A DNA stretch of 64,000 nt from IMGVR_UViG_3300021963_000023:186001-250000; one strand, 5' to 3'; positions 16,544 through 56,506 are shown, counted from the stretch's first letter. The notes: generated from the letters alone by a model not told the origin. Numbers and translations are program-made.

Positions 16544-19412
16544 ATGAAAGTCCATAATCTCACAGTAACGGGTTCCCTAACAAGTGGTGGGGAAGTCATC
16601 ACATCAATATCTTCATCCACCGTAACTAAACTTGGAAGTTTATCTTCTTCCTTGTCGACAAGTATCGGTCAATTATCATCATCGATGGCATCGTCAATGA
16701 CAAGTCTATCTTCGTCATTAACGTCAAGTATGGGTAGTTTATCGTCCTCGATGGCGTCTTCTATGACAAGTTTATCTTCGTCATTGACAGGTAGTATGGG
16801 TAGTTTATCATCTTCGATGGCAACTTCGATGAATGACCTTTCATCTTCAATGGGAAGTATAATGGCCACCACTGGTAGCAATCTATTTAAAGGTAATCAA
16901 ACAATATCAGGTTCAATCATACCAGCCGTTAATGGTTTATATGACTTAGGTTCAATAACAAATGAATTTAGAGATTTATATCTTTCTTCCGCATCATTAT
17001 ATATCGACGGAACAAAGGTACTTGGAAGCACAACACAGGAACTTACAATCACAACTGATACAGGACAATCATTTAAGATATTAGAAGCCGGTTCAGACAC
17101 AATTACATTACAAGCAGCAGACGGAAATATTACACTTGCAACATCAGGTGGTGGAGATGTTATATTAGATCCAACAAGTGGACTTATTGCACTTAAGGGA
17201 ACAACAACATTATATGCTGGTAATAAAATACTATCATCTGATGGGAATGCAATTCAAATCGGTAATAGTGTAACAATGACAGGTTCATTAATAGTAACCG
17301 GATTTATTGAAACACAAGAATTAAGAACAACATATATTAGTAGTTCAATTTTATATAGAAGTGGTAGTACTAAGTTTGGTGACGAATTAGGTGACACACA
17401 TTCATTTACAGGAAGTTTAACCGTTAGTGGGAGTATTAGTATACCTAGTTCAGGATTGGTCTCAGGATCGTCCCAAATTACGTATGGTGGATTAAGTGGT
17501 GTACCAAGTGGTATTATAAGTGGTAGTTCACAATTACCATCTGGATTGGTATCGGGTAGTGTACAAGTATTAAACGGAAGTGGAGTGTTTAGTGGTAGTG
17601 CACAATTGCCATCTGGTATTGTTAGCGGTAGTGCACAAACTATTGCTAATTTACCAAGTGGAGTGGTGTCGGGTTCAGCACAAACTATTGCAAATCTACC
17701 AAGCGGAACCGTATCTGGTTCTAGTCAAGTATTAAATGGTACAACAATCCATTCTGGTTCATTCTTTAATGGTATCAGTTGTATCTGGTAGTGTGCAGGT
17801 GGATGTTATGTCAACAACAAATATTGCTCGGCTCGCAACAACTGGTTCGAACGTATTTACTGGTGCTCAAACAATCAACGCAAGTAATGTGGGTAGAATA
17901 AATTTAGGAAATACAACAGAAACAAAAACAGCGGGTGCAATCATCGCACAAACATCCCCATCATATGGTGCAACCGGTAAACTTGGGTTTAGTGTTACAA
18001 CCTGGGGTGTAAATACTGATTATGATTTAACCGAAGTAATGGCGATAGATATGAGAAGCGCCGATACAAAGGGTGCTATAATTTATATGAATCCATTTGG
18101 TGGTGGTCGACTTGGTGTGGGAACACAAAACCCAACAGAAATGTTGCACGTATATGGTTCTGGTTCAGCAACATCAATCAAGGTAGAAACAGCAACAAAT
18201 CACGCAACATTTTTTGAGGCTAGTACATTTACCGGAACAACTAAAACAAGACTTCAATCTAATTCAAGTGCTGGATTTGTTGGTACAATAACAAGTCACC
18301 CATTTGATATTTTTTCTGGAAATGCATTTGCCGCGAGATATAACACGAATGGTAATTTAAATGTTGGATATCAAGGAGATCAAGGAGCTAAATTATATGT
18401 CCAAGCAAACCTTGCCTCATATGCTGCATATATTGAACAGCTTGGTGGGGCCACAAGTTCTTATGGTGGTTTAAGAATTACAACAAATAGTACTGGTGTT
18501 AACTCTTTATATATTGATAACGCAGGTACTGAACGTTTTTCAGTAAAGGGCAGTGGTGTTGTACATATACAAAACGCTCTTGGTGTTGGTTACAGTGATC
18601 CACAATACACTTTACAGGTTCTTAATACAATAGGTTTAAGAGCTAATAGTCAAAACATTAAAGCAATAACAGGTACCGGTTGGGGTTATAGTCCGTCTAC
18701 ATATAAAGTTGTTATGCTTGGTGACACCGCTAATAATGTTACGGTATCAATTGGTTATGATCCATCTGGTAATGCAAATAGTGCATTTAATGGTGCCGGT
18801 GGTGAGGTTTTATTTAGAAATGGTGCGTCATTTGCAACACCAAACGCAGCAAATACTTCATTTAATTTAAACACATTAGTATTAAAGGATGGAAAAGTTG
18901 GTTTTGGTAACGCCGATCCAACATACGGTGTGGATGTTAGTGGTAATATTAGAATTAATGCTGGTGCAACATCATATCTTTATTTTAGTTCAACAATAAC
19001 AAATAGATATCTAGCATATAATGGTGCGGATTCTTATTGGAGAAGTGATGGTGTTCATTATTTTGAAAAAACATCTGGATATAAAGGTTCTTGGGATGCT
19101 AATGGTAATTTAACAGTAACGGGAACAATAACAGAATCATCAGCTAAAAGATATAAAGAAAATATTAAATTATTAGAAAACTCTTTAGATAAAATCATAA
19201 AACTAAGGGGTGTGTCTTATAATAAAATAGAAAGTGGTGATAAAGAAATTGGTTTAATTGCGGAAGAGGTTAATGAGATATTACCTGAGTTAATTACCAA
19301 AAACACAAATGGAGAAATTGAATCTGTAGCATATGGTAGAGTGGTTAGTGTTTTAATTGAGGCAATAAAAGAATTAAAAATTGAAATTGAAGAATTAAAA
19401 TCTAATTTATAA
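16544..19412 (+). pseudogene. Tail fibre with C-terminal S74-like chaperone, split by a frameshift near 17780 (track ORFs 16544-17791 and 17736-19412)
   Basis: In paralogues SGSAQTIANLP is followed by VSGSVQVDVMSTTNIARLATTGSN. Here that continuation is in the +1 frame after GGT ATC AGT. The C-terminus is 'ESSAKRYKENI..LENSLDKI...GLIAEEV...VLIEAIKEL'. Could be an assembly error. Confidence 0.7.
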
Positions 19413-19888
19413 TGGCGTCATTACAAGGAACAACGGTAACAACATTTAATGCAACAACATCAGCCACAGCATCCTCTATTTGGAACACATCCTCAGGATC
19501 TGTTCAACAATGGGCCGGATATGTTGGTGTACCAACACCTTATTATGAACCATCAAATAATTTTGCTAATTTAATTGGAAATAATAATGGATATGCTTGG
19601 ATTATGGGTCACGTTTCAATCCCAGCAAATCAATCATATAATAGTTGTCACGATTTTTGGTTTGCATTATCAAGATATGGTATAAAAACCTCTTTTGTTA
19701 CAACAAACGATGGTTTATTAGGTTTATCACATTATCAAGATCCTGGAAATGCAAACATAAATTATTTAAGAATTACAAATAACTATAATGCAAGTTGGGC
19801 TTATGGTAATTATCACGTGTGTGCAACAATCTTTACCGGTAGTGCCAATAACTCGGTCATATCATCAGTTTTAACAAGAATTAATTAA
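19412..19888 (+). CDS. Fibre-associated protein, paralogue 1 of 3
   Basis: 158 aa. Shares MA.L..T start, 'F.LSRYG', 'YQDPGNANINYLRITN' and LTRI end with the next two ORFs. Confidence 0.65.
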   Translation: MASLQGTTVTTFNATTSATASSIWNTSSGSVQQWAGYVGVPTPYYEPSNNFANLIGNNNGYAWIMGHVSIPANQSYNSCHDFWFALSRYGIKTSFVTTNDGLLGLSHYQDPGNANINYLRITNNYNASWAYGNYHVCATIFTGSANNSVISSVLTRIN

Positions 19889-19889
19889 T

Positions 19890-20360
19890 ATGGCAACGCT
19901 AATAGCATCATCAATCAATGGGACATTAACAGCAACTACTAGTATAGTTTCCCCTAAATTATTACAAACATATTCAACACAACAATTTAAAGAGTATATT
20001 GGTAGTGCTTCAATACCTAGTTCTGCAAATAGCGCAACAAATTACATAGATTTGTTTGGAAATACGGGAGCACACGAAAGAATGCTTGGGTATGTTTCCT
20101 GGACCGTTTATCAATCACAAATACATACAGGATCATTTATGTTTCAATTATCTGAATATGGTTTAAGTACATACAACTTACAGAATAGTGGATATTGGTC
20201 ACTCGCTAGACATAATCCAACTTATGGTACTAACTATATTAGATTTACAAATACTGTTGGTACTGAATGGGGTAACGGAACATATTATTTTGTTGCTAGA
20301 ATAACCGGTTTAGGTGGTCACTCATTTGTATCATCATATTTAACAGAAAGAATAAGATAG
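19890..20360 (+). CDS. Fibre-associated protein, paralogue 2 of 3
   Basis: 156 aa, with 'FQLSEYG', 'NYIRFTNT' and the ending LTERIR. Confidence 0.65.
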   Translation: MATLIASSINGTLTATTSIVSPKLLQTYSTQQFKEYIGSASIPSSANSATNYIDLFGNTGAHERMLGYVSWTVYQSQIHTGSFMFQLSEYGLSTYNLQNSGYWSLARHNPTYGTNYIRFTNTVGTEWGNGTYYFVARITGLGGHSFVSSYLTERIR

Positions 20361-20361
20361 T

Positions 20362-20808
20362 ATGGCAAATTTAATAAGCACAACAGCACCAACAATATCA
20401 GCGTCTTTAATAACATCACCATTAACATATATGGAGACGGGTAACGGAATGATTGAATATACTGGTTCTGTTTTCTTAAATAACAATGGATCGGTGGATA
20501 TTTTAACCAATAATAGTGGTTATTCTAGAGTTGTTGGTTTAGGTTATTTTATGGCGGTTAGATCCAGCTCTTCTTGGTCTTTTGGACACTTTAGTTTTCA
20601 ATGTTCAAGATACGAAACCTCATACACAAATTTATTACAATCAGATTGGGGAGGGTATTCAATAGCTAATTACCAAAATCCGGGTAATGTTGACATAAAC
20701 TCCGTTAGATTCACAAATACTTCTGGTGATAGTGGGACGTTTTATTTTAATTTTTTATTACAAAACCACGTAAGCGAATCATCGGCAAATTTAACAAGAA
20801 TTAAATAA
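20362..20808 (+). CDS. Fibre-associated protein, paralogue 3 of 3
   Basis: 148 aa, with 'FQCSRYE', 'YQNPGNVDINSVRFTNT' and the ending LTRIK. Confidence 0.65.
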   Translation: MANLISTTAPTISASLITSPLTYMETGNGMIEYTGSVFLNNNGSVDILTNNSGYSRVVGLGYFMAVRSSSSWSFGHFSFQCSRYETSYTNLLQSDWGGYSIANYQNPGNVDINSVRFTNTSGDSGTFYFNFLLQNHVSESSANLTRIK

Positions 20809-20816
20809 TTATAATT

Positions 20817-21074
20817 ATGACACATCCATTAGACGACGGAACCGAATTAATAAATCCACAAGATGGAACACCATATACCGAAATTCAAAGGTTTGGTTTT
20901 TACACTGGATTACAAGAAGTTTTTGATACGGAATATCAAAGACAAAGAAAGAATGAATATCCACCAATTGAGGAGTATATTGACGGTGTAGTTAAAGGTG
21001 ATCAATATCAAATTGACGACTATATTCAAAAATGCTTGGCGGTTAAATTAAAATACCCAAAACCAACTAATTAA
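20817..21074 (+). CDS. Small phage protein, probable fibre assembly chaperone
   Basis: 'YQRQRKNEYPPIEEYID...CLAVKLKYPKP' motif, common in small ORFs downstream of phage fibre genes. Confidence 0.55.
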   Translation: MTHPLDDGTELINPQDGTPYTEIQRFGFYTGLQEVFDTEYQRQRKNEYPPIEEYIDGVVKGDQYQIDDYIQKCLAVKLKYPKPTN

Positions 21075-21127: not shown

Positions 21128-24100
21128 ATGGAATTATACGGTTCGTTATTAAACATTTCGGGGTCAGTAACAGCCTCAGCATTTACCGGTTCCTTCAATG
21201 GAGATGGTGGAGGTTTATATAACCTTCCAGCGTCAGGTGTTACAGGTTTAAACCTATCACAAATAGCAAGTGGAAACGCCACAGCATCAATTTCATCATC
21301 GGGGTTTACGGTTAATAAAAGTACCCAAATTCAAGGTGATTTATCCGTTACAGGGTCAATTATTGCAACCAACTATATTGTAAGTTCATCTGTAACTTAT
21401 ATGACCACAAGTTTTGCTAGTGGTTCATCTATGTTTGGTAACGATGGTAATGATGTACATCAATTTACAGGTTCCGTTCAAATTACGGGTTCAATATCAT
21501 TAAATGGACAAGCAATTGGTACGGGTAAGTTAGACGAAACAACATTTCAATCATATACATCATCAATATCAAGTTCAATTGGTTCATTAAGTTCATCAAT
21601 TGCATTAACAGATGTTTCACAAAGTAATAGATTAACAACGATTGAAGGTAATTATGCAACGACTGGTAGTAATTTATTTAAAGGTAGTCAAACCATATCA
21701 GGTTCAATTATACCATCTGTAGATAACACATATGATTTGGGTAGTTCAACATATCAATGGAGAGACGTTTATATCTCTTCAGGGTCATTATACATCGATG
21801 GTACTAAAGTATTGGGAAGTACCTCACAGGAACTTACAATTACAACAGATACAGGTCAATCAATTAAAATATTAGAGGCAGGTTCGGATTCAATTATATT
21901 ACAATCTGCCGATGGTGATATCGAATTAAAATCATCAGGTGGTGGAGATATATTATTTGACCCAACAAACGGTCTTATATCAATTAAGGGAACAACACAA
22001 ATACAAGATGGTTTTAAAATAACTTCATCAGGTGGAACCAACATAGTTTTTGGTGACACTATAATTGTTAGTGGTTCAATAGATTTAACAGGTAATGTTG
22101 ATGGTATTGATTTACAATCATTCAGTTCTTCGGTATCTGCAAGTATTAGTTCATTGTTAGGTGGAAATACATCATTAAGTACTAGTATTGCAACCACAAC
22201 TAGTGGATTAAGTTCTAGTATTGGTTCATTAAGTTCATCGGTTGCAACAACAACAAGTGGATTGAGTTCTAGTATGGGAAGTTTATCTTCATCTGTTGCA
22301 ACAACAACATCAGATTTAAGTTCTAGTATTGGAAGTTTGTCATCTTCTGTGGCAACTACAACATCAGGATTGAGTTCTAGTATAGCAACAACAACTCTTA
22401 ACTTAAAAAATCGGGTTGATTCTATTGAAACAACAACAGGTAGTTTAAACACATTCACATCAAGTGCAAGTGGAAGATTAACATCTATCGAAGGAATTAC
22501 GGGATCAATAAGTTTACTTAACACATATACAGGTAGTAACAATACTGTTATTGGTACTTTACAAACAAGTACAAGTTCATTAAATTCTTATACAAGTTCT
22601 AACACAACAAACATAGACGCGATTCACATTTCAACGGGTTCGTTTAAATCGTTTACTTCATCATTCGATACTGCATTTGGAATGAGTGGTGCGGACGTTA
22701 CCGTTAAAGGTAATTTAACTGTTTCAGGAACACAGACAACGGTCAATTCAACAACAGTTGCCATTGGTGATAATATCATTCAATTAAACGGAACGGGAGC
22801 GACAAACGCAGGTTTAGTGGTTAGAGACGCGACCGCACCAAATACCTTATCGGGATCATTATTATGGGATAGTACCAGCGATAAATGGATAGCAGGAACT
22901 TTAGGTTCCGAAGATGATATTGTATTAAAAACAGCAACTCAAACATTAACAAATAAAACAATTAATGCGTCACAATTAGTCGATGCATCTGTAACAAACA
23001 CTAAATTAGCTAATTCATCTATAACAATAGCTGGAACATCAACATCATTAGGTGGTACAATATCTGCAGCGACAATATTATCAGGTACGGGAACTGTATC
23101 GGGGTCTGCACAAATTGATTTAACCGCAACAGCAAATTACGCTTCAGGTATATTAACAAGATTAAATGCGGTTGGTGTATTTTCTGGTTCTGCTCAGGTT
23201 ACTGGAATTGGTAATGCACAATTAACAAATTCATCTGTAACCGTTACTGCAGGTACAGGTATGAGTGGCGGTGGTGCAGTATCGTTAGGAGGTACTGTAA
23301 CATTAACAAATGCGGGTGTAACTTCATTAACAACTAACACTGGTTTAAGTTCAAACGTAAGTGCAACAGGTGCGGTTACAATTACAAATACAATAACTAA
23401 TAATAACCAATTAACCAATGGTGCGGGATATATAACCTCCGCAGGTACAGCAACTAATGTTAGTGGAATAGTTGCAGTTGTAAATGGTGGTACAGGTGCG
23501 TCAACCACATCTACAGCAAGAACAAACTTAGGATTGGCAATTGGTTCAGATGTTTTAGCATATAGAACATTTGGAACCGCAGCAAATAATAACACAGGCG
23601 ATTTTGCTTTAGTTAATGCCACACATTATGTTGGTACAACAGCAATCGCAGCTAACAGAGCATCCGCATCACAAACATTAACGGGAGTGTCAATTGATGG
23701 TAATGCTGCAACCGCAACAATTTTTAATAATGGTAGTCTATATATTTCAACAGTAAATGGAAATACCTTAAATTCGGGATTTAGTAATGCAGGAGATGGT
23801 AGTGATATTTGGATTAACTATAGAGGATATAATGACGCTCAGTTATACTTTAGAGATTTTAGGGTGGGTAATGGAAAAGGTACGCAAATTGCTTTATTTA
23901 CCGGTTCTAATGGTAGTTTAGCGGTAACAGGTACCATAGGAGCATCAAACTATAGTGGAACACATAGTGGAGCATCTTCAGGAACAAATACTGGTGACCA
24001 AACAAATATTTCGGGTAATGCTGCAACCGCAACAACTGCCGGTAGTACTGGTACATTATCAAGTAATGCTGTTACAAATGGATATTTGGTTATCGGTGGT

Positions 24101-24598
24101 AACTATTCAAACAACGCATATAATGGTGTTGCTGGTGGAACAAGATTAATGTTTGGTGGCGGTAACTCTGATGCTGTTGATAATTACTACATTGGTACAA
24201 ATATGGAAGATTATGGTGGTAACTACAATAAATTAGATTTAAGATGGCATACAGGTATTCGTATGGGTGCACAGGCGGGTTATGGCGGTATTAGATTTTA
24301 CAATAATGAAGACTTAAGTTCCGTTCTATTTTCAATCGGTGCCAGTGATGGTAACGTTAGAAGCCACACGAATTTATTACCATCTGCAAACAATTCATAC
24401 AATTTAGGTAGTGCATCACTTAGATGGGCTAACTTATACACCAACGACTTACATTTAAGTAATGAAGGTAAAGAAGGTGGAAATGAAATAGATGGAACAA
24501 CAGGTGACTGGACTATACAAGAAGGTCAAGAAAATCTGTATATTATAAATCATAAGAACGGTAAGAAGTTCAAAATAGATTTAACTGAAATAGTATAG
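21128..24598 (+). CDS. Long tail fibre
   Basis: Mosaic of the shared modules, with the C-terminal fibre motif 'LGSASLRWANLYTNDLHLSNEG...DGTTGDWTIQEG..LYIINHKNGKKFKI'. Confidence 0.8.
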   Translation: MELYGSLLNISGSVTASAFTGSFNGDGGGLYNLPASGVTGLNLSQIASGNATASISSSGFTVNKSTQIQGDLSVTGSIIATNYIVSSSVTYMTTSFASGSSMFGNDGNDVHQFTGSVQITGSISLNGQAIGTGKLDETTFQSYTSSISSSIGSLSSSIALTDVSQSNRLTTIEGNYATTGSNLFKGSQTISGSIIPSVDNTYDLGSSTYQWRDVYISSGSLYIDGTKVLGSTSQELTITTDTGQSIKILEAGSDSIILQSADGDIELKSSGGGDILFDPTNGLISIKGTTQIQDGFKITSSGGTNIVFGDTIIVSGSIDLTGNVDGIDLQSFSSSVSASISSLLGGNTSLSTSIATTTSGLSSSIGSLSSSVATTTSGLSSSMGSLSSSVATTTSDLSSSIGSLSSSVATTTSGLSSSIATTTLNLKNRVDSIETTTGSLNTFTSSASGRLTSIEGITGSISLLNTYTGSNNTVIGTLQTSTSSLNSYTSSNTTNIDAIHISTGSFKSFTSSFDTAFGMSGADVTVKGNLTVSGTQTTVNSTTVAIGDNIIQLNGTGATNAGLVVRDATAPNTLSGSLLWDSTSDKWIAGTLGSEDDIVLKTATQTLTNKTINASQLVDASVTNTKLANSSITIAGTSTSLGGTISAATILSGTGTVSGSAQIDLTATANYASGILTRLNAVGVFSGSAQVTGIGNAQLTNSSVTVTAGTGMSGGGAVSLGGTVTLTNAGVTSLTTNTGLSSNVSATGAVTITNTITNNNQLTNGAGYITSAGTATNVSGIVAVVNGGTGASTTSTARTNLGLAIGSDVLAYRTFGTAANNNTGDFALVNATHYVGTTAIAANRASASQTLTGVSIDGNAATATIFNNGSLYISTVNGNTLNSGFSNAGDGSDIWINYRGYNDAQLYFRDFRVGNGKGTQIALFTGSNGSLAVTGTIGASNYSGTHSGASSGTNTGDQTNISGNAATATTAGSTGTLSSNAVTNGYLVIGGNYSNNAYNGVAGGTRLMFGGGNSDAVDNYYIGTNMEDYGGNYNKLDLRWHTGIRMGAQAGYGGIRFYNNEDLSSVLFSIGASDGNVRSHTNLLPSANNSYNLGSASLRWANLYTNDLHLSNEGKEGGNEIDGTTGDWTIQEGQENLYIINHKNGKKFKIDLTEIV

Positions 24599-24599
24599 T

Positions 24600-25193
24600 A
24601 TGCCATTAAATGTAGAAGGTACAATATTTGGAGATAAAACAATCACACCAGCATCTGGTACATTGTCATTACCAAGCACATCATTGGCAATTAGTGGTTG
24701 GCATAGAAGAGGTATTAATAATCCAATATTTAGAGCAAATGGATCATTACAAGCGTGGCGGTACCCAACTGATTCTGGTTGGAATGGAGCAGCAACTTGG
24801 AATATATTAGATTCAAGAATTGCATGGGTAACAACGGATAGAACAGGTAATTTTAGCACATCAACAGGTAGGTTCACCGCACCTTCTGCTGGTTATTATC
24901 ATTTCATGATGAATCTTTATATGTTAAACGATATTTCCGCACCATACAACACCGGTGCCGGTTATATTCACCCACAATTTGCAAAAAATGGTGGATTAGG
25001 TTGGAATAATGGTCAAACACCATATACAATTTACACATATGGTGCCGCAGGAAATTATCCCGATGGTATTGATATATCTGCGGTTATGTCTTTAGCTGCG
25101 GGTGACTATGTTGATATTAGAGTTTACATTAATGCGAGCACAACTAGACTTTATGGTGCACACACAGGATTTTGGGGGTGGAAAATTGGTTAA
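24600..25193 (+). CDS. C1q/TNF-like domain protein, paralogue 1 of 3
   Basis: 'FSTSTGRFTAPSAGYYHF', 'LAAGDYVDI' and a terminal F.G..I, which are gC1q signatures. Confidence 0.7.
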   Translation: MPLNVEGTIFGDKTITPASGTLSLPSTSLAISGWHRRGINNPIFRANGSLQAWRYPTDSGWNGAATWNILDSRIAWVTTDRTGNFSTSTGRFTAPSAGYYHFMMNLYMLNDISAPYNTGAGYIHPQFAKNGGLGWNNGQTPYTIYTYGAAGNYPDGIDISAVMSLAAGDYVDIRVYINASTTRLYGAHTGFWGWKIG

Positions 25194-25224: not shown

Positions 25225-25515
25225 ATGGCACAGTACACAGTAACATTAACAGACGCACAAGAGAAAGCATTAAGATGGGTTGCAGTAGATCCACAAGATT
25301 GGTTTGAAAATTTTGTATTTGCGAGATGTGAATCCGCAATTGATGAAATTGTAAGTAATGAGATAACAAGAAAATTAGCTGCGGGTGAAACAATATCAGG
25401 GTCAAAAGAAGAAATTGTTATGGCGTCAAACATTGTTTCGGCTGAAGAAAGAAGTCTAATACAACCAGATGTCTATAACGATATGATAAACCCAACACCA
25501 GATCCCTTTTTATAA
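25225..25515 (+). CDS. Small phage protein, probable fibre chaperone
   Basis: 96 aa with 'DPQDWFEN....R...AIDEIV', preceded by TATTTATA. Confidence 0.55.
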   Translation: MAQYTVTLTDAQEKALRWVAVDPQDWFENFVFARCESAIDEIVSNEITRKLAAGETISGSKEEIVMASNIVSAEERSLIQPDVYNDMINPTPDPFL

Positions 25516-26102: not shown

Positions 26103-26105
26103 GTT

Positions 26106-48782: not shown

Positions 48783-51700
48783 ATGAATATATTTGATCCT
48801 CACATATCGGGCTCCCTATCAGTATCTGGTTCGGGAGAAATTTCAGGAGACTTAAGGGTACTGGGTACCATTTCTGGCTCTATTAAGGGAGACGGGTCTC
48901 AACTCTTTAATATACCCTCTAGCGGTGTTACAGGGCTCAATTTAACACGAATTGCTGATGGGGTTGCCACAGCATCCATTTCTTCAGCAAACGGCTTAAG
49001 AATTAACTCAAATACCGAAATTACGGGGACATTAAAACTTAATAAAGTAAACTTAGGTAGTAACAACATTGTTGATATTACTCTTACAGATGGGGGAGGG
49101 AAATATTTCATCAACGGAGTTAGAGCTCCAAGGTTATCCTTCATTAAGGGATTCAAATATAGATTTTATTTTAATAACAATAACGTACACCCATTACTTT
49201 TTTCTTTAACTAGCGAAGGGGAACACAATGGAGGTACAATATATACCACTGGAATAACAACCAACTCCGACCCTTTTTATGTTGAAGTTGATGTTACCGA
49301 TGCCACAGCCACAACATTCTATTATTGGTGTGACCATCACGTTGGGATGGGTAATGCTATAACAGTATATTCGGATTTTATACATGGTCAATCTAGTATT
49401 GGTCTCATTAACGTAGATACAACTGCACTTGCCACAACCGGGTCAAATAACTTTACAAATATTCAAAGAACAAGTGGGTCCTTAGTGGTGACCGGTTCCG
49501 TTGATATCACAGGTTCAATTACATTGAATGGTCAAGCAATTGGAACAGGAAAATTGGATGAAACAACATTTCAATCATATACAAGTTCAAACGATTCAAC
49601 CAACTCAACACAAAATAGTCGGTTAACATCAATCGAGTCTGCAACGAGTAGTTTGAATTCATTTACTAGTTCCATCGATAATACAATTAAAAATAAACTT
49701 AATACGGAAGCAGTTATAACTGGAAGCGTTCAAGTTTTAATAACAGGAACAACAGGATATTCCACGTTTAGCTCAAGTGTGTCTACAAGTATAGGTTCAT
49801 TATCTAGTTCAGTTGCCACCACAACAAGTGGATTATCATCTAGCATTGGTTCTTTGAGTTCTAGTGTTGATTCTTTATCCTCATCAATTGCAACAACAAC
49901 TAGTGGGTTAAGTTCTAGTGTTGCAACAACAACAAGTGGATTAAGCTCAAGTATTGGAAGTTTATCTTCGTCTTTTAGTTCCACTAATGATACTCAGAAT
50001 GGTAAATTAACAAGTATTGAAACATCAACAAGTAGTTTAAATACATTTACTAGTTCTATTGACACAACAATTAAAAATAAACTTAACACAGAAACGGTTA
50101 TATCGGGAAGTGTTCAAGTTATAATAACAGGAACAACTGGTTATTCAACATTCAGCTCAAGTATATCAACAAGTGTAGGATTATTAAGTTCGTCAGTTGC
50201 TACAACAACAAGTGGATTAAGCTCAAGTATTGGAAGTTTATCTTCATCTTTTAGTTCTACCAGTGATGCACAGAATAATAAAATTACAAGTATTGAAACA
50301 TCAACAAGTAGTTTAAATTCATATACAAGTAGTAATATTACTAACATAAATGCAATTCATACATCAACAGGTAGTTTAAATACATTTAGTTCATCAATAT
50401 TAGGTAGTATTGAACTTACTGGTTCTAATTTAACAGTTAAAGGAGATTTACTTGTTAAAGGAACAACAACACAAATCGATTCAACAACCGTAAACATTGG
50501 CGATAATATCATTCAATTAAATGGTACTGGTGCAACCAATGCGGGTATTGTTGTTAGAGATGCAACAGCACCAAATACCATTTCAGGATCATTGTTATGG
50601 GACACAACAAATGATTATTGGAAGGCTGGAATTGTAGGAAGTGAAGAAAAAATAATTCTTAATACTGAATACTCAACGTTCTCTACATCAATAGATTCTA
50701 GAGCAACTAGTTTACAAACATCAACAAGTTCTTTAAACACATATACCAGTTCTAATAATACTAACATAAGTGCTATTCACACATCAACCGGTAGTTTAAA
50801 TACATTTACATCTAGTGCTAATACTAAATTTGGTGTTATCGAAACCTCCACATCAAGTTTAAATACATTTACTTCTTCGTTATTAACGGCAATAGAGTTA
50901 ACAGGTTCTAACCTTACAGTTAGAGGTAACTTCTTGGTTAAAGGTACAACAACAAACGTTAATACAACAACGTTAGATGTTGATAATAATCTAATTAACT
51001 TAAATGGTAATGGTGCGTCATTTGCTGGTATACGAGTTAAAGATACAACAGGTCCAAATTTAATATCAGGGTCATTATTATGGGATGCAACAAATGATTA
51101 TTGGATTGCGGGTCAATTAGGTTCAGAACAAAGATTAGTAAGAGAAACAGAATTTAACAATGCCGTTACAAGAGTAGGTAATGTTGAAACTTCAACAGGT
51201 TCATTAAACTCTTTTACGAGTTCTATTAATACAACCATTAAAACAAAATTAAATACTGAAGGTGTTTTAAGTGGATCCATTCAAGTTAATCACAATACAA
51301 CAACAAATTATGTTGCAAATGAACATATAAACCATACGGCGGTTTCAATTACTGCAGGAAGTGGTTTAACTGGTGGCGGAGATATATCAACAACACGGAC
51401 AATTAATGTGGGTGCGGGTAACGGTATAACAGTAAATGCTGATGATATTGCAATTGATACATCGTCAGCAACATTTACCACGGGTGTTAAAACTAAATTA
51501 AATACTGAAGGTGTAATATCAGGTTCTGCACAAGTTACTGGATTAAGTAACGCACAATTAACAAACTCATCGTTTCATGTTGGAACAACATCAATATCAT
51601 TAGGTAGAACAAGTGCGTCTCAAACATTAACGGGAATATCAATTGATGGCACCTCAGCTTATGCCACTCAATGGGGTACTAGTGCTGGATATGCTAATTT

Positions 51701-53099
51701 TAGTTCAACTGCTATATCAAGTGGTGTAGGATGGGTTTTGGGTACTACAGGCAATGGTTATTATGCTCCTGTTTCACTTGCTAGTGTGTCTTCTTTACTA
51801 AACTTAAGTGGTACAAACACGGGTGATGAAACATTAGCGAGAGTAAATGCATTAGCAATAACCACAGTGGGCACAATTACTTCAGGTACTTGGAACGGTA
51901 CTGCAATTGGAAATGCATATTTGGCAAACTCATCTTTTCATGTTGGAACAACATCAATATCATTAGGTAGGGCATCCGCATCACAAACATTAACGGGAGT
52001 ATCGATTGATGGTAATGCCGCAACAGTAACAAACGCAACCTTCTATCGTCAGTTCACGGTAAGAGATGATAGAAGCGATGGAGGTAATTATAATTTATCA
52101 GGAAGAGCAACTGGTTTATATGCGATTGAAAGTTCAGGATCTAATGGTCCGGGTTCTGGGTATTTAAGTTTGATACACGTTGCTAATGGTACAGATGTTG
52201 CTTTCCAAATTGCGGGTGGATATACCTCTGATAATATGTATTTTAGAGGAACATCAGCATTACAAAGCGGAACTGGATATAGTGCTTGGAGAACGGTTAT
52301 TCATAGTGGTAACATTGGTTCACAAACAGTATCAAACGTATCTGGAACGGTTGCAATTGCTAATGGTGGAACAGCAGCAACAGACGCAACAACAGCAAGA
52401 ACAAATTTAGGTTTAGCAATTGGTACAAACGTTTTAGCATATAGAACATTTGGAACTGCGGCAAATAGTGCAACAGGAGATTTTGCAACAGCAGCACAAG
52501 GAACAACCGCAGATGCCGCATTAGCTAGATCGGGTGGAACCATGACGGGTAATTTACTATTCTCTAACAAGGGTATTAACATGAAGAGAGATAGTGGTGC
52601 GAATACAGGTATATCTTGGTATTCTACATCATATTCAGCGTGGTGTGATTATATGTCACCAGCAGCGACGACAGGTTGTGGCCCGAATGGTAATATTACC
52701 GCACCAGCAGGAACATATGTAACTTCGTGGGGATTAAGACGGTTTATTGAGGATAACGCGGGATTTGGTTGGACTTGGGAATCAGGAACATCAACTCAAG
52801 TAACACCAACTATTAAAGCAGAATTAAGAGCATCTGATGGTTTATTTAGTGTTGCTGGTGCAATGTATTCTGCGGGTAGTGTTGTGAAAACTGTTGCTAA
52901 CTCATCATATTCAACATCATTTAGTAGTGTATCATCAGTAACAGTTACACATAGTTTAGGAACAAAAGACGTGGCAGTATTTGTTTATGACAGTTCAGAT
53001 AATATGTTCTGGCCATCATCAATCGTTACAACAAGCACATCGGTGGTTACAATAACTTTTTCATCTTCTAGATCAGGTAGGGTTGTAGTTGTAAGATAA
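48783..53099 (+). CDS. Long tail fibre with cupredoxin-like insert
   Basis: Shared fibre modules and Ser-rich repeats, an insert 'HPLLFS...YYWCDHHVGMG', and a C-terminal 'VTHSLG.KDV.V.VYD' domain. Confidence 0.8.
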   Translation: MNIFDPHISGSLSVSGSGEISGDLRVLGTISGSIKGDGSQLFNIPSSGVTGLNLTRIADGVATASISSANGLRINSNTEITGTLKLNKVNLGSNNIVDITLTDGGGKYFINGVRAPRLSFIKGFKYRFYFNNNNVHPLLFSLTSEGEHNGGTIYTTGITTNSDPFYVEVDVTDATATTFYYWCDHHVGMGNAITVYSDFIHGQSSIGLINVDTTALATTGSNNFTNIQRTSGSLVVTGSVDITGSITLNGQAIGTGKLDETTFQSYTSSNDSTNSTQNSRLTSIESATSSLNSFTSSIDNTIKNKLNTEAVITGSVQVLITGTTGYSTFSSSVSTSIGSLSSSVATTTSGLSSSIGSLSSSVDSLSSSIATTTSGLSSSVATTTSGLSSSIGSLSSSFSSTNDTQNGKLTSIETSTSSLNTFTSSIDTTIKNKLNTETVISGSVQVIITGTTGYSTFSSSISTSVGLLSSSVATTTSGLSSSIGSLSSSFSSTSDAQNNKITSIETSTSSLNSYTSSNITNINAIHTSTGSLNTFSSSILGSIELTGSNLTVKGDLLVKGTTTQIDSTTVNIGDNIIQLNGTGATNAGIVVRDATAPNTISGSLLWDTTNDYWKAGIVGSEEKIILNTEYSTFSTSIDSRATSLQTSTSSLNTYTSSNNTNISAIHTSTGSLNTFTSSANTKFGVIETSTSSLNTFTSSLLTAIELTGSNLTVRGNFLVKGTTTNVNTTTLDVDNNLINLNGNGASFAGIRVKDTTGPNLISGSLLWDATNDYWIAGQLGSEQRLVRETEFNNAVTRVGNVETSTGSLNSFTSSINTTIKTKLNTEGVLSGSIQVNHNTTTNYVANEHINHTAVSITAGSGLTGGGDISTTRTINVGAGNGITVNADDIAIDTSSATFTTGVKTKLNTEGVISGSAQVTGLSNAQLTNSSFHVGTTSISLGRTSASQTLTGISIDGTSAYATQWGTSAGYANFSSTAISSGVGWVLGTTGNGYYAPVSLASVSSLLNLSGTNTGDETLARVNALAITTVGTITSGTWNGTAIGNAYLANSSFHVGTTSISLGRASASQTLTGVSIDGNAATVTNATFYRQFTVRDDRSDGGNYNLSGRATGLYAIESSGSNGPGSGYLSLIHVANGTDVAFQIAGGYTSDNMYFRGTSALQSGTGYSAWRTVIHSGNIGSQTVSNVSGTVAIANGGTAATDATTARTNLGLAIGTNVLAYRTFGTAANSATGDFATAAQGTTADAALARSGGTMTGNLLFSNKGINMKRDSGANTGISWYSTSYSAWCDYMSPAATTGCGPNGNITAPAGTYVTSWGLRRFIEDNAGFGWTWESGTSTQVTPTIKAELRASDGLFSVAGAMYSAGSVVKTVANSSYSTSFSSVSSVTVTHSLGTKDVAVFVYDSSDNMFWPSSIVTTSTSVVTITFSSSRSGRVVVVR

Positions 53100-53118: not shown

Positions 53119-54258
53119 ATGTTAAGAGAAAATGTAGAAGTTAGTGGGTCCTTAAATGTTAGTGGACAATATATTATACCAAGAGGGCCACGAGCAAATA
53201 GGCCATCTAGTCCTGATATTGGATCATTATATTTGGAAGAATCTACTAGTGGTAGTTTTGTTGTAACATACACAGCCTCATCAAATTATGACGATGGGTG
53301 GGAACCTGTCGGTTCGCAAAACACAGATAGAACTGGGTTCAAATATAGACAGGTTATTAATTACTCATACTTAGCTGGTGGTTATAAATCCGCATCACCA
53401 TGGAAGAACGTTCATAGAACAACCAATTCAACAGATCAAACGGTTCACTTAGGGGAATTATTGGATTACCCCGCATCATATACCTCCGGAGCGTGTAGTA
53501 AAAGTATTTTATTTCTTTGGTCAACAAATACCGATGGAGCATTTAAAGGAGATAATACTATTCATTCAACTTGGACCAGTGGTGTTAATATGGTAAATGA
53601 AACATCATATGCACACCAATCAAAATGGGATTTGGCAAATGCGAGAGATGACTGTGGTACTTTACATCAAGAAACAGAATTTGCTTGGATATTTGGTGCT
53701 GGGGTTGCTGCAGTTGAGAAGTTCAATTTAACAAACGAAACAATGTATAGTGTTTATTACCAAGCGGGTGTCCCATACATTACAACAACATCATCAATCA
53801 CGGGTAGTGGCCCTTCTGGTGCATCAGGATTTTCAGATGAGAATTATGGTTATGGATGGACACAACAAAGTGGTACAAAACTATTCTTCGCAAATGATAC
53901 ATTCACAAATAATCAGCAGTGGGGTGCGAGTGGTCAACAAAAAGGTATTAGTTCAAAGGTGGGTAAAGGTTATGCGGGAAATGAAGGAACATATAATGGG
54001 GGTTATAATTTAAGAAGATGGAATGTTTTTACTGAAACTAATTTAGGTAATGTTTCAAAACCTCACGGTAACTGTGGTGAAGAAAACTTTACAATGGGAC
54101 AAGATCATCAATATATGTTAGGTTGTTATGACGGTGCACAGGTAAATACTAGTTGGAAATTTGGTTACACTACGGATACTGGTACAGTAAACCCTAGTGG
54201 TTTGGCGCCAGGAGTAAATGGTGGAACATCATCAGGTCATTGCGGTTGGAGAACATAA
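53119..54258 (+). CDS. Beta-propeller-like (Kelch-like) virion protein, paralogue 1 of 3
   Basis: N-terminal 'SGSL...RP.SP..GSLYLE' fibre-type segment, repeated 'YLAGGY / WIFGAG..VEKF / GYAG' blades, and the ending SSGHCGWRT. Confidence 0.6.
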   Translation: MLRENVEVSGSLNVSGQYIIPRGPRANRPSSPDIGSLYLEESTSGSFVVTYTASSNYDDGWEPVGSQNTDRTGFKYRQVINYSYLAGGYKSASPWKNVHRTTNSTDQTVHLGELLDYPASYTSGACSKSILFLWSTNTDGAFKGDNTIHSTWTSGVNMVNETSYAHQSKWDLANARDDCGTLHQETEFAWIFGAGVAAVEKFNLTNETMYSVYYQAGVPYITTTSSITGSGPSGASGFSDENYGYGWTQQSGTKLFFANDTFTNNQQWGASGQQKGISSKVGKGYAGNEGTYNGGYNLRRWNVFTETNLGNVSKPHGNCGEENFTMGQDHQYMLGCYDGAQVNTSWKFGYTTDTGTVNPSGLAPGVNGGTSSGHCGWRT

Positions 54259-54276
54259 AATTTATATTTATAAGAT

Positions 54277-55383
54277 ATGCTACACGAAAATATTGAAATT
54301 AGTGGGTCCCTAAAAGCACAAGGCGTGATAAAATCACCAATTGGAACACGGGCAAATAGACCGAGCAGTCCACAAACTGGTTCACTTTATCTAGAACAGG
54401 CAACTAGTGGTAGTTTTTTAATGGTTTATATTGGTGTAAGTAACAACGATAGTGGTTGGGTTAGAGTATCGTCTCAGGTAAATGCTAATGTTGGGTTTAA
54501 ATTCAGACAAATTATTAACTATTCATACCTAGCCGGTGGATATAAAGATTCATCACCATGGAAGAATGTTCATAGAACAATAAATGCAACGGATCAAACA
54601 ACACATTTAGGTGAGTTGTTGGACTATCCAGCATCATACACATCTGGAGCTTGTAGTAGGTATATCTTATTTATATGGTCAGTCAATACGGATAATGTGT
54701 GGAAATCTGCATCAGATATACACGGAACAACAACCGCGGCGGTTAATATGACCAATGAAACAAAGTACGCACATAATGTAAAGTTTAATATAACAAACAT
54801 AAGGTCAGATTGTGGTACCATGCATAAAGAAACCGCCACCGCCTACATTTTTAGTGGAGGTAATGCAACCGTTGAAAAATTCGATTTGAATACAGAAACA
54901 ATTGCCACCGGTTTTAATTTAACAACAATAACCGGTAACGATGGTGGTAGTGCATTCTCCGATGAAAATTTTGGATATGGATGGACAAGTAGTGAAGGTG
55001 TTAAAATGAGTTTTGCAACAGAAACATTCAGCTCAAGTGGAATGTGGGGAAACCACTCACAACAAAAAGGAATTAGTTCAAAAGTTGGTAAGGGTTACGC
55101 GGGTGCCGATGGTTCTTATAATGGTGGATATGCTTTAAGAAGATGGAGCAACGCTAACGATACTAATATTGGTAACGTTGCTAAACCACATGGCAACTGT
55201 GGAGAAGAAAATTTTACAATGGGGCAAGATCATCAATACATGTTAGGTAATTATGATGGTGCACAAAATAATACAAGTTGGAAATTTAGTTACACAACAG
55301 ACACAGGAACAGTAAACCCTAGTGGTTTAGCTCCTGGTGTTAATGGTGGAACGTCATCCGGACATTGTGGATGGAGAGGATAA
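54277..55383 (+). CDS. Beta-propeller-like protein, paralogue 2 of 3
   Basis: Collinear with 53119. Ends SSGHCGWRG. Confidence 0.6.
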   Translation: MLHENIEISGSLKAQGVIKSPIGTRANRPSSPQTGSLYLEQATSGSFLMVYIGVSNNDSGWVRVSSQVNANVGFKFRQIINYSYLAGGYKDSSPWKNVHRTINATDQTTHLGELLDYPASYTSGACSRYILFIWSVNTDNVWKSASDIHGTTTAAVNMTNETKYAHNVKFNITNIRSDCGTMHKETATAYIFSGGNATVEKFDLNTETIATGFNLTTITGNDGGSAFSDENFGYGWTSSEGVKMSFATETFSSSGMWGNHSQQKGISSKVGKGYAGADGSYNGGYALRRWSNANDTNIGNVAKPHGNCGEENFTMGQDHQYMLGNYDGAQNNTSWKFSYTTDTGTVNPSGLAPGVNGGTSSGHCGWRG

Positions 55384-55396
55384 AACTAATTAAAAT

Positions 55397-56506
55397 ATGA
55401 TATACGAGAATTTAGAAATTAGTGGAAGTTTAACATCAGATCGTGTAGTTAATAGACCACCTAAAGGCGTTAGAGCAAGTAGACCTGGTTCACCATTATC
55501 TGGTTCTTTATATTTGGAAGAATCTACTAGTGGTAGCTTTTTAATGTTATATACCGGAGTATCAAATATTGATAACGGATGGGAAAGAATTGCAGCACAA
55601 GAAACCATCCCAATAGCATTTAAATATAGACAAGTTTTATCATATTCGTACTTAGCCGGTGGTTATAAAGATTCATCACCGTGGAGAAACGTACATAAAA
55701 CAACAAACTCAACGAATCAAACAACACACGTTGGTGAATTATTAGATTATCCAGCGTCTTATACATCCGGTGCTTGTAATAAAACAATATTGTTTATTTG
55801 GTCAGTAAATGATGATGGGGCATGGAAAGGTCCAGATAGTATTCATGGGACTCGGACATCAGCAATTAATTTGTTTAACGATACAAACTATGCTCATCAA
55901 GCTAAATTTAACACAGGTATTGCTAGAAGTGACGTTGCCACTATGCAAAAAGAAACGGAGTTCGCCTATCTAATTTCAGGTGGATCGACAACCATTGAAA
56001 AATTTAATCTATCTAACGAAAGTTATGTAAGTGGATTTGGTGTAACGTCAATAAATGGTAATGATGGTGGAGCCGCATTCTTTGACGAAAGTTTTGGATA
56101 TGCTTGGACAAATAGTGGAGGTATCAAGTTTAATTTTTCAAATGAAACTCCCTCATCGTCAACACAATGGGGAGCACACGCTCAACAAAAAGGAATTAGT
56201 TCTAAGGTTGGAAAAGGATATGCGGGGAATGAAGGTTCATATAATGGGGGTTACAACTTAAGAAGATGGAGTAACTCTACCGATACAAATATTGGTAATG
56301 TTGCAAAGCCACATGCCAACTGTGGTGAAGAAAACTTCGCATTAGGACAAGACTGGCAATATATGTTAGGAAATTATGATGGAACAGGACAAAACAATAC
56401 GTCTTGGATAATGGTTTATGCAACCGACACAGGTTCAAATGCCATTACGGGATTAGCACCACGGGTTAACGCTGGGACATCATCTGGACATTGTGGTTGG
56501 AGATAA
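55397..56506 (+). CDS. Beta-propeller-like protein, paralogue 3 of 3
   Basis: Collinear with 53119. Ends SSGHCGWR. Confidence 0.6.
   Translation: MIYENLEISGSLTSDRVVNRPPKGVRASRPGSPLSGSLYLEESTSGSFLMLYTGVSNIDNGWERIAAQETIPIAFKYRQVLSYSYLAGGYKDSSPWRNVHKTTNSTNQTTHVGELLDYPASYTSGACNKTILFIWSVNDDGAWKGPDSIHGTRTSAINLFNDTNYAHQAKFNTGIARSDVATMQKETEFAYLISGGSTTIEKFNLSNESYVSGFGVTSINGNDGGAAFFDESFGYAWTNSGGIKFNFSNETPSSSTQWGAHAQQKGISSKVGKGYAGNEGSYNGGYNLRRWSNSTDTNIGNVAKPHANCGEENFALGQDWQYMLGNYDGTGQNNTSWIMVYATDTGSNAITGLAPRVNAGTSSGHCGWR

What the first reader, a model, noticed from the sequence alone, without database searches (positions are those of the whole stretch)
19412..56506. Recurring 'long fibre + three paralogues' architecture, seen three times
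Seen: fibre 16544-19412 is followed by three ~150-aa paralogues and a small chaperone-like ORF. Fibre 21128 is followed by three C1q-like paralogues with a small ORF among them. Fibre 48783 is followed by three propeller-like paralogues and two helical ORFs. The three families are unrelated to each other but each has exactly three copies. Established: fibres are trimers, and animal C1q heads are A/B/C heterotrimers. Inference: heterotrimeric receptor-binding tips on homotrimeric shafts, which would be unusual for phages. The alternative is interchangeable homotrimeric tips.
Basis: partly seen in the sequence, partly recalled or inferred. Interest (0 to 1): 0.62.

Follow-up and report, generated by a model that had tools for sequence, protein, structure and literature searches.

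The report
Three conserved fibre-tip gene triplets
A large T4-like phage carries three unrelated sets of exactly three tandem paralogous head-domain genes next to its tail-fibre genes; relatives keep each set at exactly three copies, which fits (but does not prove) three-chain heterotrimeric fibre tips, so far reported only for a virophage.

Summary
The window lies in a 251-kb T4-like, cyanomyovirus-related virus record. It has three tandem triplets, and the whole record has exactly three members of each family.

- **A (19412-20808):** a beta-sandwich like the distal domains of tailspikes and tail fibres.
- **B (24600-26690):** a genuine C1q domain.
- **C (53119-56506):** an N-terminal module plus a six-bladed Kelch-like propeller.

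A and B each come with one family-specific small ORF (Asm, Bsm).

The count of three is not free to vary:
- All top 120 database relatives of A, bar one outlier, fall into three orthogroups.
- Every A contig examined reads S74-fibre, A1, A2, A3, Asm.
- B is a triplet in two deep lineages, and their copies are not 1:1:1 orthologues.
- C is a triplet in all relatives of at least 58% identity.

Outside these clades the heads occur singly, in pairs, or fused to fibre C-termini. That means C1q heads can form homotrimers. The fibre ends do not impose three: the same FIB2-type end precedes other gene sets in relatives.

Heterotrimeric tips are my preferred reading for A and B (about 0.45) and less likely for C. 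This is untested, because the one complex prediction gave no answer. A published virophage heterotrimer shows the same genomic signature.

The parts
16544..17791 (+). Fibre 1, N-terminal ORF (415 aa). It is 76% identical to residues 121-392 of fibre 12888-16295. It ends in a stop inside a 56-nt overlap with the next ORF.
17736..19412 (+). Fibre 1, distal ORF (558 aa), in the +1 frame relative to the previous ORF. Its C-terminus carries a Peptidase_S74 intramolecular chaperone domain (residues 469-520).
   Evidence: Pfam PF13884, 45.8 bits against a cut-off of 22; PHROG long-tail-fibre distal-subunit families
19412..19888 (+). A1, 158 aa: a floppy N-terminal ~28 aa followed by an 8-stranded beta-sandwich.
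   Evidence: AlphaFold model pLDDT 83.6. Best PDB matches are C-terminal domains of phage tailspikes and fibres, Z 7-8.2. BFVD hits are tailspike, tail-fibre and virion proteins.
19890..20360 (+). A2, 156 aa; paralogue of A1 (33% identity) and a distinct orthogroup.
20362..20808 (+). A3, 148 aa; paralogue of A1 and A2 and a distinct orthogroup.
20817..21074 (+). Asm, 85 aa: a small accessory ORF that follows A3 in every relative examined. A chaperone role is inferred only.
   Evidence: phrog_9114 and phrog_2687, both of unknown function; co-occurrence in L107-L118; no PDB, Pfam or NCBIfam match
21128..24598 (+). Fibre 2, 1156 aa. Its last 75 aa match the C-terminus of fibre gp28 of cyanopodovirus P-SCSP1u.
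   Evidence: PDB 8i4m_e, E 4.4e-21. That part of gp28 is unresolved in the structure.
24600..25193 (+). B1, 197 aa: a short N-terminal tail plus a C1q domain.
   Evidence: Pfam C1q 23.3 bits, just under the 23.7 cut-off; family profile against PDB C1q domains down to 5.6e-9 for single domains
25225..25515 (+). Bsm, 96 aa: a small accessory ORF that accompanies C1q-head genes in nearly all relatives, including single-copy and fibre-fused ones. A chaperone role is inferred only.
25515..26102 (+). B2, 195 aa, C1q domain.
26106..26690 (+). B3, 194 aa, C1q domain. It is the sister of B2 and the two cannot be separated on the tree.
48783..53099 (+). Fibre 3, 1438 aa. In relatives it has a conserved N-terminal ~500 aa, a mosaic middle and a conserved 65-aa C-terminal domain that comes in two allelic types.
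53119..54258 (+). C1, 379 aa: an N-terminal ~75-aa module plus a six-bladed Kelch-like beta-propeller.
   Evidence: phrog_1417; single-copy homologue in cyanomyoviruses
54277..55383 (+). C2, 368 aa; paralogue of C1 (65% identity). Its alleles reassort independently of C1 and C3 in relatives.
55397..56506 (+). C3, 369 aa; paralogue of C1 and C2.
56558..58062 (+). D1 (254 aa) and D2 (246 aa): conserved companions of C. They are homologous to Syn19_045 and Syn19_044. Function unknown.
   Evidence: phrog_1409

Best explanation
Each triplet is an old, rigidly kept three-gene module. It encodes small head-domain proteins and sits in one tightly packed gene string with a tail-fibre gene. For A and B the string also includes a single family-specific small accessory protein. 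The three chains of a module are non-redundant: each is its own orthogroup under its own purifying selection.

For A (tailspike-type beta-sandwich) and B (C1q jelly roll), I think the most likely reading is this. The three chains are made in equal amounts, co-assemble into one 1:1:1 pseudo-threefold head with help from Asm or Bsm, and use their short, floppy N-terminal tails to join the virion's fibre apparatus. The result would be an asymmetric receptor-binding tip with three different faces.

For C the same is possible through its shared N-terminal module. It is less likely, because a propeller is a closed, self-sufficient domain.

Shown: the triplets, their folds, their strict copy number and their positional orthology. 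Inferred: virion location, attachment to the upstream fibre, the chaperone role of the small ORFs, and heterotrimer stoichiometry.
For: - Exactly three members of each family in the 251-kb record.
- A: the top 120 of 162 database relatives fall into three orthogroups (63/29/28) with one outlier. Every contig inspected reads S74-fibre, A1, A2, A3, Asm, down to 45% identity. Each orthogroup has its own conserved residues.
- B: positional clades exist in the short-type lineage (window, L005-L010) and in the long-type lineage (L011-L014, L123-L128, freshwater and marine), always three copies.
- B2 and B3 cannot be split to pair with long-type clades (AU p 0.0006). The two lineages therefore reached or restored three copies by different duplications.
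- Chain lengths match within each lineage: 197/195/194, 210/190/193, 313/319/318, 316/308/312.
- Gene gaps of -1 to 3 nt within the A triplet and between Bsm, B2 and B3 fit coupled translation.
- There is one Bsm or Asm gene per triplet in the window's lineage.
- The C1q fold and the tailspike distal domains are trimer-forming folds.
- N-terminal tails are no more conserved between paralogues than the heads are. That argues weakly against three trimers competing for one docking site.
- Precedent: three consecutive positional paralogues in virophage DSLV2 co-purify as a heterotrimer (PMC12724248).
Against: - There is no direct test. The one complex prediction (B1+B2+B3) returned 'no answer'.
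- C1q heads in relatives occur as single genes with Bsm (L016, L018, L023, L114), as pairs (L024), and fused to the ends of 934- and 1266-aa fibres (L017, L020; Pfam C1q 50.6 bits). Those must be homotrimers.
- C is single-copy in 123 cyanophage records. Syn19 has five proteins sharing its N-terminal module with different heads.
- C2 alleles reassort independently of C1 and C3. Some C1 orthologues are 501 aa against 369/370 for C2 and C3.
- Fibre 1 ends in an S74 chaperone that is normally cleaved off.
- The FIB2-type fibre end is followed in relatives by one, or two-plus-one, unrelated genes. Three is therefore not imposed by the shaft.
- In the papers my search returned, heterotrimers in tailed phages were baseplate wedges, not fibres. 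Arrays of homotrimeric receptor-binding proteins are the rule in known phages (own knowledge).
- The tree groups for the AU tests were named after seeing the tree. Ancient gene conversion between B2 and B3 could mimic independent duplication.
Confidence: 0.45

Rival explanations
1. Three separate homotrimers per module. Each paralogue forms its own homotrimeric head with its own receptor specificity. The three sit at different, fixed places: side branches on the fibre, beads docked along it by N-terminal strand augmentation, or an end-to-end series like T4 gp34-gp37. Non-redundant positions, not heterotrimer formation, would keep the number constant.
For: - Homotrimeric C1q heads must exist in relatives with fibre-fused or single-copy genes.
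- Phages with several homotrimeric receptor-binding proteins are the rule (own knowledge).
- Podophage A1002 docks two paralogous small fibre proteins in series along a rope protein by beta-sheet augmentation (PMC13730344).
- The A and B proteins have flexible Ser/Thr-rich N-terminal tails suited to such docking.
- C2 alleles are exchanged independently of C1 and C3.
- Each orthogroup has its own conserved signature.
Against: - This gives no reason why the number should be three in three unrelated families.
- It gives no reason why the C1q family should reach three twice by different duplications.
- It does not explain why all three chains keep matched lengths in each lineage.
- There is only one accessory gene per triplet in the window's lineage.
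Confidence: 0.35
2. Interchangeable or alternative tips. The three paralogues are redundant variants that compete for the same site on the fibre, so a phage population displays mixed tips and a broader host range.
For: - Fibre regions in this phage group are mosaic, and whole cassettes are swapped. In L005, L007 and L008 the fibre-1 homologue carries a different end plus 233-aa and 120-aa genes instead of the A cassette.
- C1q-domain proteins are reported as variable receptor-binding genes in phage metagenomic islands (PMC7468147).
Against: - Redundant variants should be gained and lost freely. Instead, no relative inside the triplet clades has 2 or 4 copies.
- The paralogues are old (28-51% identity) and each is conserved as its own orthogroup.
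- The N-terminal tails, which would have to bind the same site, are no better conserved than the heads.
Confidence: 0.1
3. Not fibre tips at all. Some or all of the triplets, especially C with D1 and D2, are structural or accessory proteins placed elsewhere (baseplate periphery, whiskers, capsid decoration) or are not in the virion. They merely lie beside fibre genes.
For: - C, D1, D2 and the next gene form a block conserved with cyanomyoviruses: Syn19_043-046, with 45% identity for the last gene.
- That block continues into a radical SAM enzyme and a methyltransferase.
- C is far better conserved than the middle of fibre 3.
- Long-type C1q triplets follow a 2,300-3,700-aa protein and two small ORFs, not a classic fibre.
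Against: - The A fold matches distal domains of tailspikes and fibres.
- C1q heads are found fused to fibre C-termini in relatives.
- A is always immediately downstream of, and overlapping, an S74-ending fibre gene.
Confidence: 0.1

Closest known systems
Tripartite tail proteins of virophage DSLV2 (Aquatic Virophage 1 lineage; PMC12724248)
   Same: Three consecutive paralogous genes of about 200 aa, same orientation. They form positional clades across relatives: same-position proteins are closer to each other than to their neighbours. Copy number is conserved. The authors report a 1:1:1 heterotrimer from AlphaFold3 scores, His-tag co-purification and native PAGE, and a phylogenetic link to Synechococcus phage fibres.
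   Different: A different fold family (phage tail collar PF07484, T4 gp37-tip-like). No Pfam collar hit was found in A, B or C. The host is a virophage capsid, not a tailed phage. There is one triplet per genome, not three unrelated ones. No small accessory ORF is described.
Animal complement C1q (A, B and C chains)
   Same: B has the same domain family (profile hits to the C1q A, B and C chains, adiponectin, C1QL and Caprin-2). It is also three tandem paralogous genes, and the family readily forms heterotrimers (established knowledge).
   Different: No collagen-like Gly-X-Y stalk is visible in B1-B3 (read from the alignment). The tails are short Ser/Thr-rich segments, or a 160-aa fibre-like shaft in the long type. 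The origin is phage, a dedicated small accessory gene is present, and heterotrimer formation is untested.
Phage C1q-like receptor-binding proteins in metagenomic islands (PMC7468147)
   Same: A C1q-domain gene lies downstream of a tail fibre gene and is read as a receptor-binding protein.
   Different: Those are described as single, highly variable genes. Here the feature is a fixed set of three conserved paralogues plus an accessory ORF.
T4 long tail fibre gene string (gp34-gp35-gp36-gp37-gp38) and T2/S16-type gp38 adhesin
   Same: A long fibre gene is followed by smaller genes whose products join it, with a small assembly or adhesin protein at the end (own knowledge).
   Different: The T4 proteins are not paralogues of one another and number other than three. 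No sequence or profile match to them was seen for A, B, C, Asm or Bsm.
Endosialidase and T5 pb1-type fibres with a Peptidase_S74 C-terminal chaperone
   Same: The distal ORF of fibre 1 carries the S74 domain above Pfam's cut-off. So do all fibres upstream of A triplets in relatives.
   Different: To my knowledge, known S74 fibres are not followed by a conserved triplet of small beta-sandwich proteins. The invariant link between an S74 fibre and A1-A2-A3-Asm is not a described arrangement.

Membership tests
C1q/TNF superfamily (for B1-B3) | Sequence match to the C1q domain profile | tested here: met
   A family profile of 21 sequences hits PDB C1q domains: adiponectin single-chain trimer 7.4e-13, Caprin-2 5.6e-9, C1QL3 1.6e-8, collagen X NC1 6e-7, C1q C chain 5e-5. 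Single window proteins fall just under Pfam's cut-off (23.3, 19.7 and 17.2 bits against 23.7). The fibre-fused relative L017 passes with 50.6 bits.
C1q/TNF superfamily (for B1-B3) | Ten-strand jelly-roll fold forming a trimer | not tested
Heterotrimeric C1q of animals (A/B/C type) | Three tandem paralogous chains | tested here: met
   B1, B2 and B3 are tandem, 36-51% identical, and there are three in the whole record.
Heterotrimeric C1q of animals (A/B/C type) | Collagen-like Gly-X-Y stalk N-terminal of the head | tested here: not met
   No Gly-X-Y repeats appear in the first 45 residues of B1-B3 or in the 160-aa N-terminal part of the long type (alignments).
Heterotrimeric C1q of animals (A/B/C type) | Obligate 1:1:1 assembly of the three chains | tested here: inconclusive
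   Complex prediction on B1+B2+B3 returned 'no answer'. Comparative genomics is compatible with 1:1:1 assembly but indirect.
DSLV2-type tripartite tail proteins | Three consecutive paralogues with positional orthology across relatives | tested here: met
   A. B. C.
DSLV2-type tripartite tail proteins | Phage tail collar domain (PF07484), gp37-tip-like fold | tested here: not met
   There was no Pfam collar hit for the A and B proteins, C1 or C2 (C3 was not scanned) at E up to 0.1. The folds found are a beta-sandwich, C1q and a propeller.
Peptidase_S74 (intramolecular chaperone) fibres, for fibre 1 | C-terminal S74 domain above Pfam's gathering score | tested here: met
   45.8 bits against 22, residues 469-520 of 558.
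Peptidase_S74 (intramolecular chaperone) fibres, for fibre 1 | Autoproteolytic release of the domain after trimer folding | not testable with these tools
   This needs protein expression.
Kelch-type six-bladed beta-propeller (for C1-C3) | Six-bladed propeller fold | tested here: met
   VIA-align Z 21.4, 261 of 287 residues, rmsd 2.9 to the KLHL17 Kelch domain; many propellers score above Z 14. The model itself is of low confidence (pLDDT 55.5).
Kelch-type six-bladed beta-propeller (for C1-C3) | Kelch repeat sequence motif | tested here: not met
   No Pfam family for C1 or C2 at E up to 0.1. This is a resemblance in fold only.
Tail fibre assembly chaperones (Tfa, gp38, gp57-type), for Asm and Bsm | Sequence or profile match to a known chaperone family | tested here: not met
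   No Pfam or NCBIfam hit, and no meaningful PDB hit (best E about 0.2, to unrelated proteins). PHROG hits are to families of unknown function. The chaperone role rests on position and co-occurrence only.

The most novel reading that the evidence does not exclude
Tailed phages of this freshwater and marine T4-like group build asymmetric, heterotrimeric receptor-binding heads from three different chains. They did so independently in at least two unrelated folds (C1q and a tailspike-type beta-sandwich), and twice within the C1q family. Each head is folded by one dedicated small chaperone. That would give a fibre tip with three different binding faces on a threefold shaft.
Probability: 0.4. Interest if true: 0.8.

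Novelty: new variant of a known kind. Interest (0 to 1): 0.66.

Why it matters
Phage receptor-binding proteins are treated as homotrimers in host-range prediction, in engineering and in structural modelling. Suppose these conserved triplets are 1:1:1 heterotrimers. Then a whole class of abundant aquatic phages reads its hosts with asymmetric tips that combine three specificities in one head. Fibre genes would then need to be annotated and modelled as sets rather than singly. The animal C1q A/B/C solution would also have a viral counterpart that arose independently. Even if the chains turn out to be separate homotrimers, the finding stands as a new annotation rule. The fixed cassettes S74-fibre/A1/A2/A3/Asm and C1q x3 plus Bsm define several families of unknown function, and they form a compact set of proteins that can be tested directly by co-expression.

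Tried and rejected
- **Complex prediction.** Complex prediction on B1+B2+B3 with family alignments returned 'no answer'. It is reported here only and used neither for nor against binding.
- **Reads.** An exact-pattern scan of viral contigs for the frameshift region found no other copy.
- **DNA and protein searches of the phage collection.** Megablast of 19000-27000 found nothing. tblastn of B2 found nothing.
- **A and C against PDB.** Profile searches found nothing useful. Foldseek of the A model against PDB gave no match at E up to 0.001; the fold assignment rests on VIA-align and BFVD.
- **Atlas.** The search for C1 returned only its own unnamed viral clusters.
- **Asm and Bsm.** No informative match in Pfam, NCBIfam or PDB.
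- **AU test on the full tree.** The test on the 132-row tree did not finish. It was redone on 45 rows.
- **Rejected idea: C proteins are unlikely tips because fibre 3 is hypervariable.** Only the middle of fibre 3 is mosaic; its last 65 aa are conserved.
- **Rejected idea: window B1/B2/B3 are 1:1:1 orthologues of the long-type triplet.** Rejected.


Full report
**Context.** The window is bases 186001-250000 of a 251,149-base IMG/VR virus record, estimated 75% complete. GC content is about 33%. Nearly all genes are on the + strand. Protein matches point to T4-like myoviruses related to cyanomyoviruses. The C family, D1, D2 and the gene after them are syntenic with Syn19_043-046. A relative's contig has T4-type sheath and gp19 tube genes just downstream of the A cassette.

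**Observation.** An all-against-all BLASTP of the window's ORFs confirms three tandem triplets with no similarity between families (alignments):
- A1/A2/A3: 158, 156 and 148 aa; 28-33% identity.
- B1/B2/B3: 197, 195 and 194 aa; 36-51% identity.
- C1/C2/C3: 379, 368 and 369 aa; 60-66% identity.

Profile searches of every ORF of the whole record find exactly three members of each family. Gene spacing within the A triplet and between Bsm, B2 and B3 is -1 to 3 nt. The fibre stop and the first paralogue's start overlap or are 1 nt apart.

One correction to the finding. The 'fibre 16544-19412' is two ORFs that overlap by 56 nt, the second in the +1 frame. Joined, they are colinear with fibre 12888-16295. 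This is a frameshift, an assembly error or a real split. In relatives L111-L113 the S74-bearing piece is also a separate short ORF. I could not test it.

**What the proteins are.**
- **A1** folds with confidence (pLDDT 83.6) into an eight-stranded beta-sandwich behind a disordered 28-residue tail. Its best solved matches are the C-terminal domains of Acinetobacter and Klebsiella phage tailspikes and fibres (Z 7.0-8.2, 108-117 residues). That Z range is middling. However, the top six rows are all phage tail proteins, and BFVD returns tailspike, tail-fibre and virion proteins.
- **B** is a true C1q domain. A family profile hits C1q-family structures down to 5.6e-9 for single domains. A fibre-fused relative passes Pfam's threshold.
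- **C** modelled poorly (pLDDT 55.5). Even so, residues 77-379 superpose on six-bladed Kelch propellers at Z 21.4. Its first ~75 residues form a module that five different Syn19 proteins share, each with a different head.
- **Fibre ends.** Fibre 1 ends in a Peptidase_S74 intramolecular chaperone. The last 75 residues of fibre 2 match the C-terminus of the P-SCSP1u podovirus fibre (E 4.4e-21), a part not resolved in that structure. Fibre 3 has a conserved N-terminus, a mosaic middle and a conserved 65-aa end.
- **Asm and Bsm** are two unrelated small families with no match to anything characterised.

**Copy number in relatives.**
- **A.** A profile search of 5.8 billion proteins returned 162 relatives. 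The top 120 split cleanly into A1-, A2- and A3-like groups (63/29/28), with a single 179-aa outlier. Every contig inspected (L107-L109, L111-L118) reads: gene ending in S74, then A1, A2, A3, Asm. This holds down to 45% identity. The outlier type (L110) is a single copy with Asm.
- **B.** The window's short type (190-210 aa) keeps B1-Bsm-B2-B3 in L005-L010. A long type (307-325 aa, with its own fibre-like N-terminal shaft) lies in a quite different genomic setting. It keeps three copies plus two Bsm-like ORFs in freshwater and Tara Oceans contigs, including one of 371 kb.
- **C.** There are three copies in 57 of 57 fully flanked viral-contig loci and in further metagenome contigs, down to 58% identity. 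There is one copy in all 123 matching cyanophage records.

Within the triplet clades, then, the number does not vary. Outside them it does. C1q heads occur singly with Bsm (L016, L018, L023, L114), in pairs (L024), and fused to the C-termini of 934- and 1266-aa fibres followed by Bsm (L017, L020).

**History of the C1q triplets.**
- On a 45-row maximum-likelihood tree, p1, p2, p3, B1 and B2+B3 are each fully supported.
- Forcing B3 or B2 to pair with long-type p3 costs 48.9 log-likelihood units (AU p 0.0006).
- Monophyly of all short-type proteins is not rejected (p 0.38).
- The short-type and long-type triplets are therefore not 1:1:1 orthologues. At least the B2/B3 duplication is independent of the duplications that made p1-p3. 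Three copies were reached, or restored, twice.
- Caveats: the groups were named after seeing a tree, only the p3 pairings were tested, and old gene conversion could mimic the pattern.

**What does not fit a simple 'tip on a shaft'.**
- The S74 domain of fibre 1 is normally cut off after folding.
- The FIB2-type end (EG.ENLYI.N..GKKFKI.L.EI) is followed in relatives by other gene sets: 233 + 120 aa (L005, L007, L008), or two LamG paralogues + a 547-aa glycine-rich protein + 129 aa (L006). In L009 and L010 the B triplet is followed by a further LamG protein.
- Long-type triplets follow a 2,300-3,700-aa protein and two small ORFs, not a classic fibre.
- The conserved unit is the triplet with its small ORF, not 'long fibre + three'.

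**Weighing the mechanisms.** Strict retention of three distinct orthogroups shows that the chains are non-redundant. This speaks against freely interchangeable tips. It does not by itself separate one heterotrimer from three homotrimers at fixed places.

The following favour a heterotrimer for A and B:
- Three copies in unrelated families whose folds form trimers.
- Independent arrival at three in the C1q family.
- Matched chain lengths within each lineage.
- Tight translational coupling.
- One accessory gene per set.
- N-terminal tails no better conserved between paralogues than the heads.
- The DSLV2 virophage precedent, where the same positional-orthology signature goes with co-purification of a heterotrimer (PMC12724248).

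The following count against it:
- Relatives demonstrably use homotrimeric C1q heads.
- In the tailed-phage papers my search returned, heterotrimers were baseplate wedges, not fibres.
- Podophage A1002 docks two paralogous small fibre proteins in series on a rope protein (PMC13730344), so an alternative architecture exists.
- The only complex prediction available was uninformative.

For C, the closed propeller fold, the single copy in cyanophages, independent reassortment of C2 alleles and unequal lengths in some relatives make a pseudo-symmetric heterotrimer less likely.

My estimates: heterotrimer for A and B about 0.45; separate fixed homotrimers about 0.35; interchangeable tips about 0.1; not fibre-associated about 0.1.

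**Novelty.** C1q-like receptor-binding genes next to phage fibres are known (PMC7468147). One tripartite heterotrimeric tail has been published, for a virophage. What is new here:
- Three unrelated, rigidly conserved triplets in one tailed-phage genome.
- The cassettes S74-fibre/A1/A2/A3/Asm and C1q x3 plus Bsm.
- Evidence that the C1q family reached three copies twice.

I rate this a new variant of a known kind. It offers a clear, cheap experimental test.

**Limits.**
- No isolate, no proteomics and no reads were available.
- Both structure-prediction jobs went to A and C, so B has no model.
- The small ORFs' chaperone role, the virion location of all nine proteins and their attachment site are inferences.

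Noticed in passing
window 26726-48706: The stretch between the fibre clusters is an enzyme island. It holds a methyltransferase, two GT7-type glycosyltransferase+LamG paralogues, five radical-SAM paralogues whose SPASM domain lies N-terminal of the radical-SAM core, a further radical-SAM gene, and three 2OG-Fe(II) oxygenases. Its position between the fibre clusters suggests fibre proteins are modified after translation (speculation, not tested).
   Followed up: partly
L011, L014, L123-L128 (opposite strand, just after the C1q triplet): Long-type C1q triplet loci are always flanked by tryptophan-halogenase-like and 2OG-Fe(II) oxygenase genes. This echoes the enzyme island in the window.
   Followed up: no
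window 17736-17791: Fibre 1 is split by a +1 frame change inside a repeat-rich stretch (VSGS motifs). The two ORFs together are colinear with fibre 12888-16295. Relatives L111-L113 also have the S74 part as a separate 203-aa ORF.
   Followed up: partly
window 24374-24598: The last 75 aa of myovirus fibre 2 match the C-terminus of the fibre of cyanopodovirus P-SCSP1u (E 4.4e-21). This fibre-end module is shared across tail morphotypes. In relatives it precedes quite different downstream gene sets.
   Followed up: partly
window 12888-16295, 16544-17791, 21128-24598: The fibres are mosaics of each other. Fibre 12888-16295 shares 76% identity over 304 aa with fibre 1 and 66% over 170 aa with fibre 2. 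Fibres 2 and 3 share 36-64% identical blocks.
   Followed up: no
L029, L032-L038 and others versus window 54277-55383: Many close relatives have C1 at 98% and C3 at 97% identity to the window but C2 at only 83%. C2 alleles therefore recombine independently. The differences are densest at residues 141-205.
   Followed up: partly
L119:6087-7592, L120:1989-3494: In some relatives the C1 orthologue is 501 aa, while C2 and C3 stay at 369 and 370 aa. The extra segment was not examined.
   Followed up: no
L114:193-2590: One contig has the A1-A2-A3-Asm cassette followed directly by a single 244-aa C1q-domain protein. This links the two head families in one string and adds a single-copy C1q case.
   Followed up: no
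window 58062-59063 and 60063-60752: The conserved block C-D1-D2 runs on into a radical SAM gene, a conserved 355-aa protein (45% identical to Syn19_046) and, in relatives, a methyltransferase. The block's function is unknown.
   Followed up: no
window 6077-10153: A second fibre with a Peptidase_S74 end (53.5 bits) is followed by a 791-aa and a 111-aa ORF, not by an A-type triplet. An S74 end alone does not call for the A cassette.
   Followed up: no
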